From contig NC_068998.1 in assembly GCF_001194135.2 (NCBI RefSeq), positions 20,401,352 through 20,464,853 on the forward strand: 63,502 nt of DNA. Reading direction: 5' to 3'. A program made the translations under genes and the position numbers. The notes below the pieces were generated by a model, which made no database searches, was not told where the DNA came from, and saw only the letters and a list, made by a program, of their open reading frames with translations. The stretch's first letter is position 1; each line of letters opens with the position of its first letter. Below, piece by piece: positions 31,082-37,016 of the stretch. The DNA comes from Octopus bimaculoides. Its lineage: Eukaryota.

Positions 31082-31253
31082 ATGGTTGACATCGTAGCAT
31101 TAGCAGTTGTAGTTGTGGCATATGCTTTTGTCTTTGTTACAGGTCTTTTGTTAGTGAAATTCACTCGACGCCACCAAGAATGTACGCAACTGGAGTTCGA
31201 GTTAGTTGCTGGAAGAAACCTGTCTGTTTTCCTTGGAATTTCTACTATGACAG
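31082..31253 (+). CDS. SLC5A7-like: High-affinity choline transporter-like (SLC5A7/CHT1-like sodium:solute symporter), coding exon 1
   Basis: Acceptor TTCAG at 31051-31055 and 26 nt of UTR. ATG at 31082: MVDIVALAVVVVAYAFVFVTGLLLVKFTRRHQECTQLEFELVAGRNLSVFLGISTMT, then G|GTGTGT (phase 1). Confidence 0.9.
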
Positions 31254-31619
31254 GTGTGTGCTCTCTGTCTTAAGTTTTCAGTAGGGGTGAACTAGTCTGT
31301 GGTATTGTTTTATTTTCCTTCAGTCATAACTATTTACCATATTCTAGTACTTTTTAAAACTACTTTTGTTCTGAATATCTTTAATTATTTAGCTCCTAAG
31401 TTCTTTCATATTTCAGCTGAAAACTTAATTTGCAGTCCATTCCCTTTCGTAACAAAATCATTGTTAAAGTTGCTATCCATCCAATATTGTGTAAACCAGT
31501 CTTTGTTACAGTTGCCATGGATCTGAACATGTGCAAAATATATATGTATTGATAAGTGTTAGAAAACATGACACCCATTTAATAATCTTATGCGTTTCTA
31601 GTGCCTTTTTCATTCGCAG

Positions 31620-31818
31620 GTCCCTCATAAGGACTGGCTTCTGTACCGATGGCACGTAAAAAGCACTCTCAGAATGGTTGGCGTTAGGAAGGGCATCCAG
31701 ATGTAGAAATATTGCCAGATCAGATTGGAGCCTGGTGCAGCCACTGGCTTTCCAGACCTCAGTCAAACCATCCAACCCATGCCAGCATGGAAAACAGATG
31801 TTAAACAATGATGATGAC
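31620..31818 (+). mobile_element. (GAT)n-tailed retroelement 3' end (RTE-associated or SINE)
   Basis: TGGTTGGCGTTAGGAAGGGCATCCAG...CCAACCCATGCCAGCATGGAAA...GTTAAAC(GAT)n. About 15 copies in the window. Confidence 0.8.
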
Positions 31819-32455
31819 TGATCCATTATTGGTTTTCTTTTGTAGAACTAGAAAACAGTATTTCGATTTCGAGTTGTACCATTTAAAATTATATTTATCA
31901 GAATATTTCTCCTTCAGAACAATTACTAGATAGAAAATACACGGCCAGACTAATCAAAAATGGAATAGAATGTACAAAAACGATAGACATCCAAGAGTTA
32001 CGGAAAACAAGAAAACACCATGACACACAAAACTTTATCCTTCATATCAACACACGATCTGAGGAACATGGAAGTATGCATCATCCACTAAAACATACCC
32101 CTCCTTATGAGGGACCTGCGAATGAAAAAGGCATGGCGAGCATCTAAACATCCCAACTGCATTCTGCATGCTAATCAGTTGTTACAAGCAGTGTTTAGTA
32201 GAGTGTGTTCAAAGTACTATTACAGCCCTTTCCTTCAGTTCAGAACAAAAAAAGTTGGTAGGTCAACTGCTTAGATATATAGTAATGATATACTAAAATT
32301 ACAATAATCTAGGATAGTTATAGCTGCCCCTCCCAAGAAAAAAGTCTCAAAACTTCTGGAATGCACTTCATAGCTTAGAAATTATATTAGAACAATTTAT
32401 TCTTTCGCAATTTCTCTTTTATACCAAACTGATATGTTGTATTTCTCACTTTTAG

Positions 32456-32563
32456 CTACCATTGTTGGCGGAGGGTTTTTAAATGGTACTGCTGAGTCTG
32501 TGGCCACTTATGGTTTAGTCTGGACATTAGCTCCTGTAGGAATCCTCTTTGGCTTAATATTCG
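32456..32563 (+). CDS. SLC5A7-like: SLC5A7-like coding exon 2 (108 nt)
   Basis: TTTAG|CT...; ATIVGGGFLNGTAESVATYGLVWTLAPVGILFGLIF; G|GTAAGT. Confidence 0.95.
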
Positions 32564-33454
32564 GTAAGTATTTGTTTATCTTGAACATTATAACTGTCAG
32601 TTTTAGTTAGACAAAAGAAACAGGCTTGCAGAGAGGCCTGAAACTATTGGTTGAACTCATCATTAATTATTCTCTCCATTTATTAATTTCAATCTATTTT
32701 TTGCTGCTATTTTGTTTTTGACTGCTTCTTTCAGCACAACCATACACCTTCTCCTTTATCCTCTGCCTCTCTTTCTTTCACTGTCTTCTATCTTTCACAG
32801 TTTCTTCATTGCCTCTACACCCTCTCATCTCCCTCTCTCCACCCCTCTCTCTCTCTCTCTCTCTCTGGCCCACCTCCACAACTCCCCCCTTTTTTTTTTC
32901 TTACAGTGACTCTCTCTTCTTATGCTCCCCTCCATGGACATCACCTTTCTCTTATTCACTATTATAACATAGGATATAGCCGTGAATGCCTCCCCCACAT
33001 CTCTTGCCCAACCCACCTCATTATCATCATGTCTCTTCCATTAACCCCTGACACAACTCTTTCCCCACCCCCTTTACTCTCCTTCCAATAGCATCTCCTC
33101 TATTACTGTCTTTGCCTCCATCCTCTCACAACTATAACTCTGTTACACTCTTGTGCTTACTTACCGAAGCCCTTCTCTCCTCATGGGGCATCGGTCATCA
33201 TTGACTTTTATGTACTACTCTGGGCTATCTTTAAGGCTTTCCTCTCCCAGATCTTGGTTTTGAGTTGTCATTCATGTTTCTGCAACTTAGCTTTTTTCTA
33301 GGTAGCAGTGTTAATCATATGCAAATCCATTTTTACCTATGGAAAGAAGTGGGCCATATTAGTCTGACCTCTGTCTTTTGTCCTGTCCAGCATGAGAGGC
33401 CCTACCAGGAGTTTGCATACATATATATCAAACGATGAGGACAGTGATGATATA

Positions 33455-34351
33455 CAGAGTGGTATCAAAAAGTTCCAGGATTTATGTTTTACAAAAAATA
33501 ACTTATTTACCTAAGTTTTAACAACATCTTCGAAATAGTCACCTTGCACAGCAATACACTGGTCCCAGCGTTCCTGTCACTTTTGGAATCTGGCCTGGAA
33601 GTCATTTTCTGTGAGTCAAGGACCATGATTTGCTCTGGATCTCAACAATAGTGATAAAACGGTGACCTTTGAGCTGCATTTTCATTTTGGAGAAGAGGTG
33701 GAAGTCTGCAGGTGCTAAACCTGGCAAATAGGGCAGGTGCGGAAGCGATACCATGTTGTTTTTAGTGAGAAACTCACGAGTGAGGAGAACTTGGTTACAG
33801 GGTGCATTGTCCTGAAAAATCCAATCCTTTGCACTCCACAGATCTGGTCGCTTTCATCAAATGTGCTCCCTCAATGCTTCAAAACATCACAGTAGAACTC
33901 TCAATTGATGGTGTGGCCCTGGGGGATGAATTCTCGATGCACCATACTATATTTCTGGGGTTGATGTTTGTAGCAGGTCTTCCACATTGTTCATCATTTT
34001 CCAGGGATGTTCTGATTTTGAAGTGCCTGTACTACTCGATTATTGCATACGACCCATTGCCTCATCGCCATAAGCTTACTGAAGCATGCTCATTGTCTCT
34101 GTAGCAGACTTCCTAAGTTTAACGCAAAATTTCATGTTAGTTCTTTGTTCCTGTCCATGACAAAATTCCAGACTACAGCATACACCTGATCACAAAAACA
34201 CAAATTTTACAACTTGTGAAGTAAACTCAGTGATGTCACTCAGCACACTGCCTCATGAAGGTCACTGTTAACCATCACTGTACATGCAACCATGTGCTGC
34301 CATATGTTAGTGCTCTACAGAGCTCGTCTGGGAACTATTTGATACCACTTC

Positions 34352-34352
<1 letters not shown>
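33455..34352 (-). mobile_element. mariner (DD34D) element, internally deleted, antisense in intron 2
   Basis: TIR CAGAGTGGTATCAAAAAGTTCC with a match at 34331-34352. Minus strand reads WIFQDNAPCNQVLLTREFLTKNNMVSLPHLPYLPGLAPADFHLF, with 34 codons between the D codons at 33809-33811 and 33704-33706. Confidence 0.9.
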
Positions 34353-35181: not shown

Positions 35182-35337
35182 GTGGACTCATATTTGCCAA
35201 AAAGATGCGTGAATGTAAATATATGACGATGTTGGATCCGTTTCATAAGAAGTATGGCTCTCTGATGGTTGTTCTGATTTACTTAATAGCCCTGTTTGGA
35301 GATCTTCTGTGGTCAGCTTCCATTCTTATTGCACTTG
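35182..35337 (+). CDS. SLC5A7-like: SLC5A7-like coding exon 3 (156 nt)
   Basis: TTTTTTGCAG|GT...; GGLIFAKKMRECKYMTMLDPFHKKYGSLMVVLIYLIALFGDLLWSASILIAL; G|GTAAGT. Confidence 0.95.
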
Positions 35338-35745
35338 GTAAGTTAACAAAATATTAAAGGAATTTTTTTATCATAACATTATACTTTTTCTTCTTTTGCT
35401 TGTTTACTTTATGTGCCTGTGGTCAAGCTGGAGCACTGTTTTAAATGACCTCAGTGCTTATTTTTCAGTCTGGTACTTATCTGTCAGTTTCTGTATGTAG
35501 GACATATCTGGCTATAAAGAAATATTACCTTGCTTGGAAACAGATGAGGTTTGGCAATTGGAAGGGCATCTCTCTATAGAAAATATGTCTCAATAAATTC
35601 CATTTGACTCATGCAAGCATAAAAAAGTGGACATTAAAATGATGATGATATGAAAATAAAATTGTAAAAAAAAAAGCTTGAAAATACAAATTCTTTTTGT
35701 CTGTTTTAATTTTCTTTTGACCCTGGTTTATGTATTGTTTTTCAG

Positions 35746-35894
35746 GAACCAGTCTGGGAATAATGACAGGCATTAATACAAACATAGCAATTGTGATATC
35801 AGCCCTTGTAACTATTGTTTATTCTGTCAGTGGTCAAATGTTTGCAATTGTTTATACAGATGTTATTCAGTTGGGATTTATTATTGTTGGAATG
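35746..35894 (+). CDS. SLC5A7-like: SLC5A7-like coding exon 4 (149 nt)
   Basis: TTTTTCAG|GA...; GTSLGIMTGINTNIAIVISALVTIVYSVSGQMFAIVYTDVIQLGFIIVGM|GTAAGT. Contains the SSS-family YTDVxQ motif. Confidence 0.95.
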
Positions 35895-36569
35895 GTAAGT
35901 ACAATTTGTACTTGGGAGCCAGTTGGAGATATGCTTCATGTCTTCTCTTGTTTCCTTTCCATATATATTTATGAAGTTTTTTTTTTGTTTGTATTTGGTT
36001 ACAAGATTCTTGATGTGAACTCTTATTGAAATAGATTTTGTATGTCCAAGAGTTGGGGTCATTATGCCAATAATAGATACACACACTGGTTCTATTTCAC
36101 ATCTTATTAATTAAAAGGCAGCAAGCTGTCTGAATCGTTAGCATGCTGAACAAAATGCTTAGTGATGTTTCGTTCATCTTTAAATTTTTTACTGGTTTCA
36201 GTTCTTGAAGCATGGCCATACTGGGGCACTGTCTTCTCGTGTATTATTGAATACATCAACCCAGTACTTATTTTAATGACCTTGGAAGGATGAAAGACAA
36301 AGTTAGCTTGGGCAGGATTTGAACTCAGGTTGTAAAGAATCATAACCAAATACCACTTGGTATTTTAGTCCACTGCCCTAGCAATTCTGTTATCTACATA
36401 TCAACTATGACCATCAAGCAGTTCCATGCCATTGTTCAGTTGCTTTCTCTTTGATTATATACTTGCAATCTTTATGTCTATTCTGGTCAGTTATATTTGT
36501 CACATTCTCCTGAATATATTTTCTTGTATTACATCCTTCTGAATATATTACCTGGATTGGCCAGGCTCC

Positions 36570-36760
36570 ATCCCCCTTGTGCTCTTGCCATTCTCCTCTA
36601 CATTGTTCCAAACATTTTTCTTGAATCGTCTTCCCCCCCTGTTTAGAGGTCTTCCGAGTGGTCTCATATGCTCACGTGGGTACCACTCGACAACTGCATA
36701 GGTCCACCGATTGTCTGTGAACCTTGCAGCATGTATTGGAATTGACTTCATCTTTTTATT
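36570..36760 (-). mobile_element. RTE LINE C-terminal fragment in intron 4
   Basis: Reads HAARFTDNRWTYAVVEWYPREHMRPLGRPLNR. Confidence 0.8.
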
Positions 36761-36890
36761 TGTAAACTGCAAAATCAGGAAATCAGGAATGTTACTTGCT
36801 TCATTAATGTAACATCACATGTTTATGTGTTAACAATATTAACAATTAAATATTTGTTCATTTTCTTTTCAAATTTTTTTTTCTTAACAG

Positions 36891-37016
36891 TCTGTGTGTA
36901 CTCCTTTTATACTTTTGGATGAAAGAGTAGCCAGCATCTCTTCAACAAGGAACAAATGGCTTGGTTCAGTATCAAAAGATGAAATTGGTGTTTGGACTGA
37001 TCTTTTCATCACTATG
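36891..37016 (+). CDS. SLC5A7-like: SLC5A7-like coding exon 5 (126 nt), last visible exon
   Basis: TTCTTAACAG|; SVCTPFILLDERVASISSTRNKWLGSVSKDEIGVWTDLFITM|GTAATT (phase 0 at both ends). Confidence 0.9.

What the first reader, a model, noticed from the sequence alone, without database searches (positions are those of the whole stretch)
31082..37016. Choline-transporter paralog lacking two putative choline-cage aromatics: possible new substrate
The spliced 237-aa product aligns colinearly with human CHT1 as I recall it, with matching intron positions and phases. Differences: TATWVGGGY becomes TATIVGGGF (W62 to I), APIGYSL becomes APVGILF (Y91 to I), GRD becomes GRN (D48 to N), and VGGLY becomes SGQMF. 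W141 and YTDVxQ are kept. W62, Y91 and W141 are reported (recalled, needs checking) as part of the aromatic pocket for the quaternary ammonium. The frame and splice sites are intact amid heavily decayed DNA, which suggests purifying selection. Inference: an SLC5A7-like subfamily with altered substrate or affinity.
Basis: partly seen in the sequence, partly recalled or inferred. Interest (0 to 1): 0.75.

Follow-up and report, generated by a model that had tools for sequence, protein, structure and literature searches.

The report
Octopus choline-transporter paralog, remodelled pocket
The window holds the first five coding exons of an intact, selectively maintained octopus gene from an uncharacterised branch of the choline-transporter (SLC5A7) family that keeps the ion sites but has replaced three aromatic residues that surround bound choline, so it probably carries something other than choline at high affinity; that remains untested.

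Summary
Five AG/GT-bounded exons at 31082-37016 splice to 237 aa that match human CHT1 (E 6e-48), with W62I, Y91I, Y67F and D48N, and with W141 kept.

The 237 aa are only the N-terminal 43% of a 547-aa protein. The window is Octopus bimaculoides CM046618.1. Exons 6-9 lie 550 kb upstream in that assembly. Synteny with O. sinensis stops at a 100-N scaffold gap (37819-37918), so the split is most likely an assembly artefact. The joined coding sequence is intact and 97.4% identical to O. sinensis. dN/dS is 0.10-0.15 across cephalopods, and spliced transcripts exist in other cephalopods.

The gene belongs to a clade of at least 53 sequences (molluscs, nemerteans, a brachiopod, annelids, perhaps a priapulid; NJ bootstrap 92). 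Position 62 is T, I, A or V, position 91 is I, and position 406 is F. W141, W254, the Na2 site, the Na3 site and the chloride loop are kept. Canonical animal and bacterial CHTs keep all six aromatics. D48N is not diagnostic.

A change of substrate or affinity is a reasonable inference, because W62A, Y91A and W406A each abolish uptake in human CHT1. It has not been tested. I rate this a new variant of a known kind, of moderate interest.

The parts
20553..20761 (+). Conserved upstream 5' exon, either 5' UTR or an alternative N-terminal coding exon. An in-frame ATG lies at 20653 and the donor GT at 20762-20763. The exon start is not defined.
   Evidence: 92% identical to the first exon of O. sinensis isoform X1. 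Spliced to 31056, the ORF reads MYVQRTDFYDIWVV...NR|AGNKSAAVIMVDI.
31056..31253 (+). Exon carrying the main ATG (31082). It encodes coding exon 1, aa 1-57 and the first base of codon 58 (TM0, IL0, start of TM1, GRN motif). The acceptor AG is at 31054-31055.
   Evidence: 98.3% identical to the O. sinensis exon.
32456..32563 (+). Coding exon 2. It contains TATIVGGGF (I60 = human W62, F65 = human Y67, GGG chloride loop) and APVGILF (I87 = human Y91).
35182..35337 (+). Coding exon 3. It contains MLDPF and LLWSA (W137 = human W141, retained).
35746..35894 (+). Coding exon 4. It contains SGQMFAIVYTDVIQ (D184 = human D188 of the Na3 site, retained; the clade-typical GQM replaces GGL).
36891..37016 (+). 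Coding exon 5, aa 196-237. It ends in phase 0 with a GT donor.
   Evidence: Same length and phase in O. sinensis and Argonauta.
37017..37818 (+). First 802 nt of intron 5. Bases 37017-37142 are wrongly read through as a 42-aa tail in the NCBI 279-aa model.
   Evidence: P0001 sequence. Collinear with O. sinensis intron 5 up to 37818.
37819..37918 (.). 100-N scaffold gap where synteny with the O. sinensis gene ends. Exons 6-9 (aa 238-547) are not in the window. They lie at CM046618.1:19888106-19926916.

Best explanation
The window carries the 5' half of a real, full-length, expressed-type gene in Octopus bimaculoides: an upstream 5' exon plus coding exons 1-5, out of 9 coding exons and 547 aa. 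The gene belongs to an old paralog clade of the SLC5A7/CHT family found across molluscs, nemerteans, brachiopods and annelids.

The protein keeps the CHT1 fold, the Na2 site, most of the Na3 site, the chloride-binding GGG loop, the translocation-path residues (R47, Q259, R260, S263) and two cage tryptophans (W141, W254). The TM1/TM2/TM10 side of the choline site is rebuilt: W62 to I (T in most molluscs), Y91 to I, and W406 to F. Clade-fixed changes in TM6 and TM10 accompany these (L246A/T, L247M, G251T, Y407I/V).

Most likely mechanism (inferred): it is still a Na+-coupled, probably Cl--dependent, LeuT-fold symporter, but its enlarged and more aliphatic pocket no longer supports CHT1-type high-affinity choline binding. 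I propose that it transports a different, probably bulkier, organic cation or betaine-like solute, or choline only at low affinity.

The apparent truncation at 237 aa is an assembly artefact, not biology.

Shown: gene structure, orthology, clade, selection, residue states and fold. Inferred: ion coupling and change of substrate.
For: Identity and structure:
- The exons splice to 237 aa and match Pfam SSF and human CHT1 at E 6e-48.
- The window equals CM046618.1:20401352-20464853.
- Full-length orthologs exist in O. sinensis (547 aa), O. vulgaris and Argonauta.
- The O. bimaculoides 3' half, XP_014777468.2, lies on the same chromosome and strand, 550 kb upstream.
- Window synteny with the O. 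sinensis locus runs from 18164 to 37818 and stops at the 100-N gap. The other piece resumes synteny just after its own 100-N gap.
- The joined coding sequence is 1644 nt with no defects, and 533/547 aa are identical to O. sinensis.

Selection and expression:
- NG86 dN/dS is 0.133 against O. sinensis (exons 1-5 alone: 0.154), 0.11 against Argonauta and about 0.10 against a cephalopod transcript of unidentified species (P0192, 65% identical).
- Ile at positions 62 and 91 is kept through synonymous codon changes.
- Intronless full-length transcript contigs come from three sequencing runs.
- Exon lengths are identical in three octopods.

Clade and sites:
- The alignment holds 124 sequences. The clade has 53. 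Position 62 is T39/I9/A2/V1, position 91 is I52/V1 and position 406 is F53, with W141 and W254 kept.
- The 45 canonical animal CHTs in the site table and 4 bacterial homologs are all W/Y/W.
- Na2 (A60, V63, A343, S346, S347), Na3 (D188, D349) and the GGG loop are conserved.
- NJ bootstrap is 92/100 for the I91 clade and 100/100 for cephalopods.
- Clade-diagnostic residues are listed.
- The AF2 model of the O. sinensis ortholog has pLDDT 91.9. Its best Foldseek hits are all human CHT1 (TMq 0.77-0.88, TMt 0.86-0.93).

Published function:
- W62A, Y91A and W406A each abolish choline uptake in human CHT1 (PMC11589582).
- A bacterial CHT with the full cage transports choline (bioRxiv 2025.09.30.678764).
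Against: - No transport data exist for any member of the clade.
- Two tryptophans plus Phe/Tyr remain, and two or three aromatics suffice for quaternary-ammonium binding in some other proteins (general knowledge), so choline transport with altered kinetics is not excluded.
- I could not inspect pocket geometry. The tools return no coordinates, so compensation by a distant aromatic residue in three dimensions is not excluded.
- I did not retrieve a canonical W/Y/W CHT1 from any cephalopod. Calling the gene a paralog in octopus rests on co-occurrence of both types in Lingula and Tubulanus, and on a squid atlas naming 'Sc5a7-2' as the cholinergic marker.
- No O. bimaculoides transcript contig for this gene was found in the protein collection.
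- The tree is NJ only.
- Cephalopods have S350G at Na3, so Na+ stoichiometry may differ.
Confidence: 0.6

Rival explanations
1. It is still a choline transporter. The remaining aromatics (W141, W254, F/Y67, F406) plus co-evolved TM6/TM10 residues bind choline with lower affinity or higher capacity, for example for non-neuronal phospholipid or betaine synthesis. In that case the clade is a kinetic variant rather than a substrate switch.
For: - All ion sites and the translocation-path residues are conserved.
- W141 and W254, two of the four cage residues, are invariant.
- The hydroxyl of choline binds a backbone carbonyl and Cl-, not a side chain.
Against: - Single alanine substitutions at W62, Y91 or W406 abolish uptake in human CHT1.
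- The full cage is invariant from bacteria to mammals in every canonical sequence examined, which argues that it is needed for choline.
- The clade coexists with canonical copies in the same genomes (Lingula, Tubulanus), as expected after a divergence of function.
Confidence: 0.27
2. The O. bimaculoides locus is a truly split or truncated gene, that is, a 5' fragment on its way to being a pseudogene. The 550-kb separation from exons 6-9 would then be a real rearrangement.
For: - In the deposited assembly the 3' exons lie upstream of the 5' exons on the same strand.
- NCBI annotates two separate partial models.
- No O. bimaculoides transcript contig was found.
Against: - Both synteny breaks coincide with 100-N scaffold gaps.
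- Both halves are intact, with dN/dS of 0.154 and 0.121 and dS of only 0.07-0.09 against O. sinensis.
- All splice sites are intact.
- The gene is contiguous in the gap-free O. sinensis locus, where intron 5 is 19.6 kb.
- A very recent break cannot be excluded by sequence alone.
Confidence: 0.04
3. The protein has lost transport and acts as a sensor (transceptor) or as a partner of canonical CHT1. CHT1 can dimerise.
For: The loss of cage residues would fit a loss of substrate binding. A dimeric CHT1 structure exists (8j74 description).
Against: The Na2, Na3 and Cl- sites, the gating residues and the translocation-path residues are under strong conservation across at least 53 sequences. That is hard to explain without a transport cycle. 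The replaced positions are themselves highly conserved (I91 98%, F406 100%), which indicates a defined new pocket rather than decay.
Confidence: 0.05

Closest known systems
Human high-affinity choline transporter CHT1 / SLC5A7 (PDB 8J74, 9BFI-9BFK, 9BIM, 8ZQO-8ZQR)
   Same: - Best sequence match (E 6e-48, about 40% identity).
- Predicted fold TMq 0.77-0.88, TMt 0.86-0.93.
- All 7 coding introns of a mammalian (Petaurus) SLC5A7 gene, used as proxy for the human gene, are shared in position and phase.
- Na2, Na3 (D188, D349), the 63VGGG66 chloride loop, W141, W254, E73 and R47/Q259/R260/S263 are conserved.
   Different: - W62I, Y67F, Y91I and W406F.
- L246T, L247M, G251T, Y407I, S243L and S350G.
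- 547 aa against 580 aa, with an unrelated, low-confidence C-terminal tail.
- One extra intron.
- No functional data.
Bacterial Na+-dependent choline transporter sfCHT (Salimicrobium flavidum; bioRxiv 10.1101/2025.09.30.678764) and other bacterial SSF homologs
   Same: Same family. Bacterial homologs reach 37-40% identity to the octopus protein.
   Different: The bacterial proteins keep the complete aromatic cage. The paper lists W99, Y126, W176, W298 and W445, and the four bacterial sequences I aligned are W/Y/Y/W/W/W. The octopus clade does not keep it.
Spiralian 'high-affinity choline transporter 1(-like)' database models, e.g. Aplysia XP_012945168.1, O. sinensis XP_029645950.1, Argonauta, Lottia, Crassostrea, Lineus, Lingula
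   Same: Same clade, with the signature x62-I91-F406 and the diagnostic residues G94, D138, M181, M247 and T251. O. sinensis is the 97.4% identical ortholog.
   Different: - Most non-cephalopod members have T62 and Y67, whereas cephalopods have I62, F67 and G350.
- All are named CHT1 by automatic annotation.
- I found no paper that describes or tests the clade.
Other SLC5/SSF transporters with different substrates (SGLT1/2, SiaT, NIS, SMCT1, DUR3)
   Same: Same LeuT-type fold and Na2 logic (Foldseek TMq 0.64-0.74). They show that substrate class in this fold changes through pocket residues while the ion sites persist.
   Different: Only 13-19% identity. The octopus protein is clearly inside the CHT branch, not in these branches.

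Membership tests
Sodium:solute symporter family (SSF, Pfam PF00474; SLC5) | Significant match to the family profile above the gathering score | tested here: met
   E 7.2e-17, 61.8 bits against a cutoff of 22.8, for the 237-aa fragment.
Sodium:solute symporter family (SSF, Pfam PF00474; SLC5) | LeuT-type fold with unwound TM1 and TM6 | tested here: met
   AF2 model of the 97%-identical O. sinensis ortholog has pLDDT 91.9 and pTM 0.90. Foldseek hits are CHT1, SGLT, SiaT, NIS and SMCT1.
CHT / SLC5A7 branch of SLC5 | Closest relatives by sequence and structure are CHTs rather than other SLC5 members | tested here: met
   CHT1 at E 6e-48 against SGLT2 at 1e-5. TMt 0.86-0.93 against at most 0.80 for the others.
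CHT / SLC5A7 branch of SLC5 | Shared gene structure with vertebrate SLC5A7 | tested here: met
   7 of 7 mammalian coding introns share column and phase with octopus introns.
CHT / SLC5A7 branch of SLC5 | Na2 site (A60, V63, A343, S346, S347), Na3 site (D188, D349, S350) and Cl- loop (G64-G66, W141) | tested here: met
   All are conserved in the clade. The only exception is S350G in the five cephalopod sequences.
High-affinity choline transporter proper (functional CHT1 ortholog) | Complete aromatic choline site: W62, Y91, W141 and W254 as the cage, plus Y67 and W406 | tested here: not met
   The octopus protein has I, I, W, W, F, F. The clade of 53 has T/I/A/V at 62, I at 91 and F at 406. All canonical and bacterial sequences examined keep W/Y/W.
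High-affinity choline transporter proper (functional CHT1 ortholog) | Groups with canonical CHT1 sequences in a phylogeny | tested here: not met
   It falls in a separate I91 clade (NJ bootstrap 92/100) apart from the W/Y/W sequences, including those from Lingula, Tubulanus and Solemya.
High-affinity choline transporter proper (functional CHT1 ortholog) | Na+/Cl--dependent, hemicholinium-3-sensitive choline uptake with micromolar Km | not testable with these tools
   This needs an uptake assay. Several HC-3 contact residues differ (L246T, L247M, W406F, Y407I).
High-affinity choline transporter proper (functional CHT1 ortholog) | Expression in cholinergic neurons together with ChAT and VAChT | not tested
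   I found only an indirect pointer. The Euprymna atlas uses a gene called 'Sc5a7-2' as the cholinergic marker, and I could not tell which paralog that is.

The most novel reading that the evidence does not exclude
An ancient clade of the choline-transporter family, kept across many spiralian groups (possibly protostome-wide, given a priapulid sequence), has kept the Na+/Cl- machinery but switched its substrate away from choline. It would then be an orphan transporter class in molluscs, annelids, nemerteans and brachiopods. Candidate substrates are a bulkier quaternary amine or a betaine-type osmolyte, or a signalling-related cation. All current databases mislabel it as CHT1.
Probability: 0.5. 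Interest if true: 0.6.

Novelty: new variant of a known kind. Interest (0 to 1): 0.45.

Why it matters
The aromatic cage of CHT is invariant from bacteria to humans in every canonical sequence examined here, and single mutations in it abolish transport. A large clade under strong purifying selection that has replaced three of the six aromatics while keeping every ion site is therefore a natural experiment on how substrate specificity is encoded in the SLC5A7 scaffold. It is also a concrete target for identifying a new substrate.

There are two practical consequences. First, these genes are auto-annotated as 'high-affinity choline transporter 1' in dozens of mollusc and other spiralian genomes. 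Using them as cholinergic-neuron markers in single-cell atlases of cephalopods or snails could therefore mislead. Second, the O. bimaculoides chromosome assembly splits this gene across a mis-ordered scaffold join, and the two RefSeq partial models should be merged.

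Tried and rejected
1. I searched the whole window on both strands for exons 6-9, using tblastn with bacterial, Aplysia, O. sinensis, Argonauta and the unidentified-cephalopod (P0192, P0198) proteins. Nothing was found beyond exon 5. I rejected the idea that the rest of the gene lies in the 26 kb downstream.

2. I considered a pseudogene or fragment and rejected it on synteny, the intact joined coding sequence and dN/dS.

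3. I checked whether D48N is part of the signature and rejected it. N48 is the commonest state in canonical invertebrate CHTs.

4. I looked for a conserved compensating aromatic next to positions 62 and 91. F at 92 or 93 and F at 89 occur in some members but are not conserved across the clade (sequences). The only clade-wide gained aromatic is F327, in the stretch just before TM8.

5. I tried to identify a canonical cephalopod CHT1 among the hits. None of the named clusters I could look up was from a cephalopod.

6. A look-up of O. sinensis isoform X2 (P0162) as an encoded gene failed, because only the longest isoform is indexed. Isoform X1 worked.

7. Literature searches for this clade, for the SRA runs behind the transcript contigs and for 'choline transporter 1-like' in molluscs found nothing relevant. 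One search call had a malformed term.

9. No tRNA genes are present. The ORF list of the window shows only repeat-derived and gap-spanning ORFs.

Full report
**1. What is in the sequence**

The region is eukaryotic, AT-rich and full of repeats and assembly gaps. Five exons lie at 31082-31253, 32456-32563, 35182-35337, 35746-35894 and 36891-37016. Each has an AG acceptor and a GT donor; the first starts at its ATG.

The product matches Pfam SSF (PF00474, E 7e-17). By phmmer its best solved relatives are human CHT1 (8j74, 9bfi) at E 6e-48, colinear over residues 6-236. SGLT2 follows far behind at 1e-5. The printed alignment shows the quoted differences:
- TATWVGGGY to TATIVGGGF
- APIGYSL to APVGILF
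- GRD to GRN
- VGGLY to SGQMF
- W141 and YTDVxQ retained

PMC11589582 places six aromatics around choline: W62, Y67, Y91, W141, W254 and W406. W62, Y91, W141 and W254 form the cation-pi cage, and each alanine mutant is transport-dead.

I also tested the intron claim. I mapped the SLC5A7 gene of a mammal (Petaurus breviceps, L009). All seven of its coding introns fall in the same alignment column and phase as octopus introns, and the octopus gene has one additional intron.

**2. Where it comes from, and why it stops at 237 aa**

The protein is the first 237 aa of an NCBI model from Octopus bimaculoides, a 279-aa 'high-affinity choline transporter 1'. The last 42 aa of that model are a read-through of intron 5. 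The window equals CM046618.1:20401352-20464853, plus strand.

No further SLC5A7-like exon exists anywhere in the window on either strand. Full-length orthologs do exist:
- O. sinensis, 547 aa (XP_029645950.1)
- O. vulgaris, 547 aa
- Argonauta hians, 554 aa
- two further sequences, of 558 and 557 aa, assembled from RNA-type contigs

The missing O. bimaculoides half (aa 238-547) is annotated as a separate partial gene, XP_014777468.2. It lies on the same chromosome and strand, but 550,261 bp upstream of exon 5.

I compared both pieces with the gap-free O. sinensis locus (L008), where intron 5 is 19.6 kb. The window is collinear with L008 from window position 18164 to 37818, and the alignment ends exactly at the 100-N gap at 37819-37918. 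The other piece (L007) becomes collinear just after its own 100-N gap and then runs to the end of the gene.

Joining window exons 1-5 with L007 exons 6-9 gives an uninterrupted 1644-nt coding sequence with canonical splice sites. It encodes 547 aa, of which 533 are identical to O. sinensis. The truncation is therefore best explained as a scaffold-ordering artefact. A very recent real break cannot be strictly excluded.

**3. Is it a living gene?**

Nei-Gojobori dN/dS values:

| Comparison | dN/dS |
|---|---|
| O. sinensis, full length | 0.133 |
| O. sinensis, window exons only | 0.154 |
| O. sinensis, exons 6-9 | 0.121 |
| Argonauta | 0.11 |
| the P0192 cephalopod transcript (synonymous sites saturated) | about 0.10 |

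- Exon identity to O. sinensis is 95-99%, against 82-93% in alignable intron blocks.
- Exon lengths 172/108/156/149/126/154/108/107 are identical in three octopods.
- The Ile codons at the two key positions differ synonymously between species (ATT/ATC and ATC/ATA), so the residue itself is under selection.
- Three independent sequencing runs yield intronless full-length contigs of the P0192 ortholog, so the gene is transcribed in cephalopods.
- I found no O. bimaculoides transcript contig, so expression in this species is inferred, not shown.
- A conserved upstream exon (window about 20553-20761, 92% identical to the first exon of O. sinensis isoform X1, donor conserved, in-frame ORF open) marks the 5' end of the transcription unit.

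**4. What family and what clade**

I aligned 124 sequences: the joined octopus protein, 115 animal CHT-like proteins from the two large searches, and 4 bacterial homologs. I then read off the human-numbered sites.

- Forty-five canonical animal sequences in the site table, from a cnidarian, arthropods, echinoderms, hemichordates, vertebrates, a bivalve, a brachiopod and a nemertean among others, have W62/Y91/W406. So do all 4 bacterial sequences.
- A block of 53 sequences instead has T (39), I (9), A (2), or single V, S or F at position 62.
- The same block has I (52) or V (1) at position 91, and F (53) at position 406. W141 and W254 are invariant.
- The block covers all cephalopod sequences sampled, gastropods, bivalves, the nemerteans Lineus and Tubulanus, the brachiopod Lingula, the annelid Dimorphilus, and one Priapulus sequence. 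The annelid Owenia is a near-member (Y62/I91/V406) and falls inside the I91 clade in the tree.
- In a neighbour-joining tree rooted on bacteria, the I91 sequences form one clade with 92/100 bootstrap support. Cephalopods have 100/100.
- Lingula and Tubulanus carry both a canonical copy and a clade copy, so this is paralogy, not lineage drift.
- Further clade-fixed differences from canonical CHTs are S94G, E138D, L181M, L246A/T, L247M, G251T, Y407I/V and S410A.

By contrast, other functional sites are conserved:
- The Na2 ligands (A60, V63, A343, S346, S347), Na3 residues D188 and D349, the GGG chloride loop and E73.
- The translocation-path residues R47, Q259, R260 and S263, highlighted in the bacterial CHT study.

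Cephalopods alone have S350G at Na3.

An AlphaFold2 model of the O. sinensis ortholog is confident (pLDDT 91.9, pTM 0.90) apart from the C-terminal tail. Its nine best Foldseek hits are all human CHT1 structures (TMq 0.77-0.88, TMt 0.86-0.93, rmsd about 2-3 A in eight of the nine). Other SLC5 members score 0.64-0.74. The residue equivalences therefore rest on an ungapped, structurally supported alignment.

**5. How it most likely works**

Shown: it is a CHT-branch SLC5 protein with the full ion-coupling apparatus and a conserved but different set of pocket residues.

Inferred: it still runs a Na+-driven, probably Cl--assisted, alternating-access cycle. The choline cage has lost its TM1 and TM2 walls and part of its TM10 lid.

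Using standard residue volumes from memory, W to I, Y to I and W to F remove roughly 125 cubic angstroms of side chain. In the T62 forms the figure is about 175. That is of the order of the volume of choline itself, and the replacements are aliphatic.

In human CHT1 the single mutants W62A, Y91A and W406A are dead, and the cage is invariant even in bacterial choline transporters. The most likely reading is therefore that this clade does not perform CHT1-type high-affinity choline uptake and has a different, probably bulkier, cationic or zwitterionic substrate. I put this at about 0.6.

The main rival is a choline transporter with altered kinetics, at about 0.27. A truly broken gene and a non-transporting sensor are each about 0.05 or less.

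RNA editing cannot rescue the aromatics. A-to-I editing of ATT or ATC yields only Val (genetic code; codons).

**6. Comparison with what is known, and novelty**

- Membership in SSF/SLC5 and in the CHT branch is met on every test.
- Membership in 'high-affinity choline transporter proper' fails on the one defining structural feature that could be tested, the aromatic cage, and on phylogenetic position. The functional criteria are untestable here.
- The genes are present in public databases under the automatic name 'high-affinity choline transporter 1(-like)'.
- In the searchable literature I found no description or assay of the clade.
- A Euprymna cell atlas uses 'Sc5a7-2' as a cholinergic marker, which implies that cephalopods have more than one SC5A7 gene. 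I could not tell which one it is.
This is a gap in the paralogy argument for octopus itself.

**7. Verdict**

The clade is ancient and spiralian-wide, with a third lost aromatic (W406F). The 237-aa 'product' is half a gene, cut by an assembly mis-join.

I rate this a new variant of a known kind. Interest is moderate (0.45): it gives a clear and testable orphan-transporter hypothesis, but such divergent paralogs are not rare and nothing here demonstrates a new function.

Noticed in passing
window 37819-37918 (and L007 3597-3696): These 100-N gaps are scaffold joins where collinearity with the O. sinensis locus ends and resumes. As a result the gene's exons 6-9 sit 550,261 bp upstream of exon 5 in CM046618.1, which is probably a Hi-C ordering error. 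About 10.5 kb of the O. sinensis intron 5 (L008 15248-25759) has no counterpart in either piece.
   Followed up: yes
window 37017-37142: The NCBI 279-aa model of this gene ends in 42 aa translated from intron 5. The 3' half is a second partial RefSeq model (XP_014777468.2) with an invented 11-aa start. The two should be one 547-aa gene.
   Followed up: yes
window 20553-20761: A conserved upstream exon lies 10.3 kb before the ATG exon. It is 92% identical to the first exon of O. sinensis isoform X1 and has a conserved GT donor. An in-frame 36-codon ORF from ATG 20653 stays open despite a net 3-nt indel.
   Followed up: partly
L009 (Petaurus SLC5A7) compared with the window and L007: All seven coding introns of a mammalian SLC5A7 are shared in position and phase with the octopus paralog. 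The exon structure therefore predates the duplication and the protostome-deuterostome split. The octopus gene has one extra phase-1 intron.
   Followed up: yes
L007 50036-50142 (exon 8); O. sinensis, Argonauta, L004: There is a cephalopod-specific S350G change at the Na3 sodium site (codon GGA in all four coding sequences). The rest of the clade and nearly all canonical CHTs keep Ser. This may alter Na+ stoichiometry.
   Followed up: partly
O. vulgaris proteins P0275, P0383, P0384: O. vulgaris has four annotated isoforms of the ortholog. One, of 450 aa, starts at M56 and skips exon 5 (IIIGM|TFGTIPWQ), which would delete a transmembrane segment. I did not check whether transcripts support it.
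   Followed up: no
window 24200-24577 (+) and 33440-34100 (-): By eye, these stretches translate to decayed Tc1/mariner-type transposase relics. The second lies inside intron 2 and has many stops. Pfam found no match, so this is unverified.
   Followed up: partly
window 31632-31822, 37469-37640, 40366-40660, 52984-53174, 59326-59516; and 25574-25950, 27013-27348, 28339-28716, 55605-56272, 59719-60106, 63277-63448: Two short interspersed repeat families, of about 190 bp and about 380 bp, occur many times in both orientations. They are found in the window and throughout the O. sinensis locus at 72-92% identity.
   Followed up: no
alignment A3: Elysia P0290/P0292, Pinctada P0302, Lingula P0036, Neoechinorhynchus P0013, Strongylocentrotus P0258: Other, separate CHT-like lineages also have non-canonical residues at the aligned cage positions 62, 91 and 406 (M/Y/F, V/F/S, W/Y/A, Y/Y/L, I/Y/Y). 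A group of echinoderm, amphioxus and other sequences is W/Y/F. Pocket remodelling in this family is therefore not confined to the clade described.
   Followed up: no
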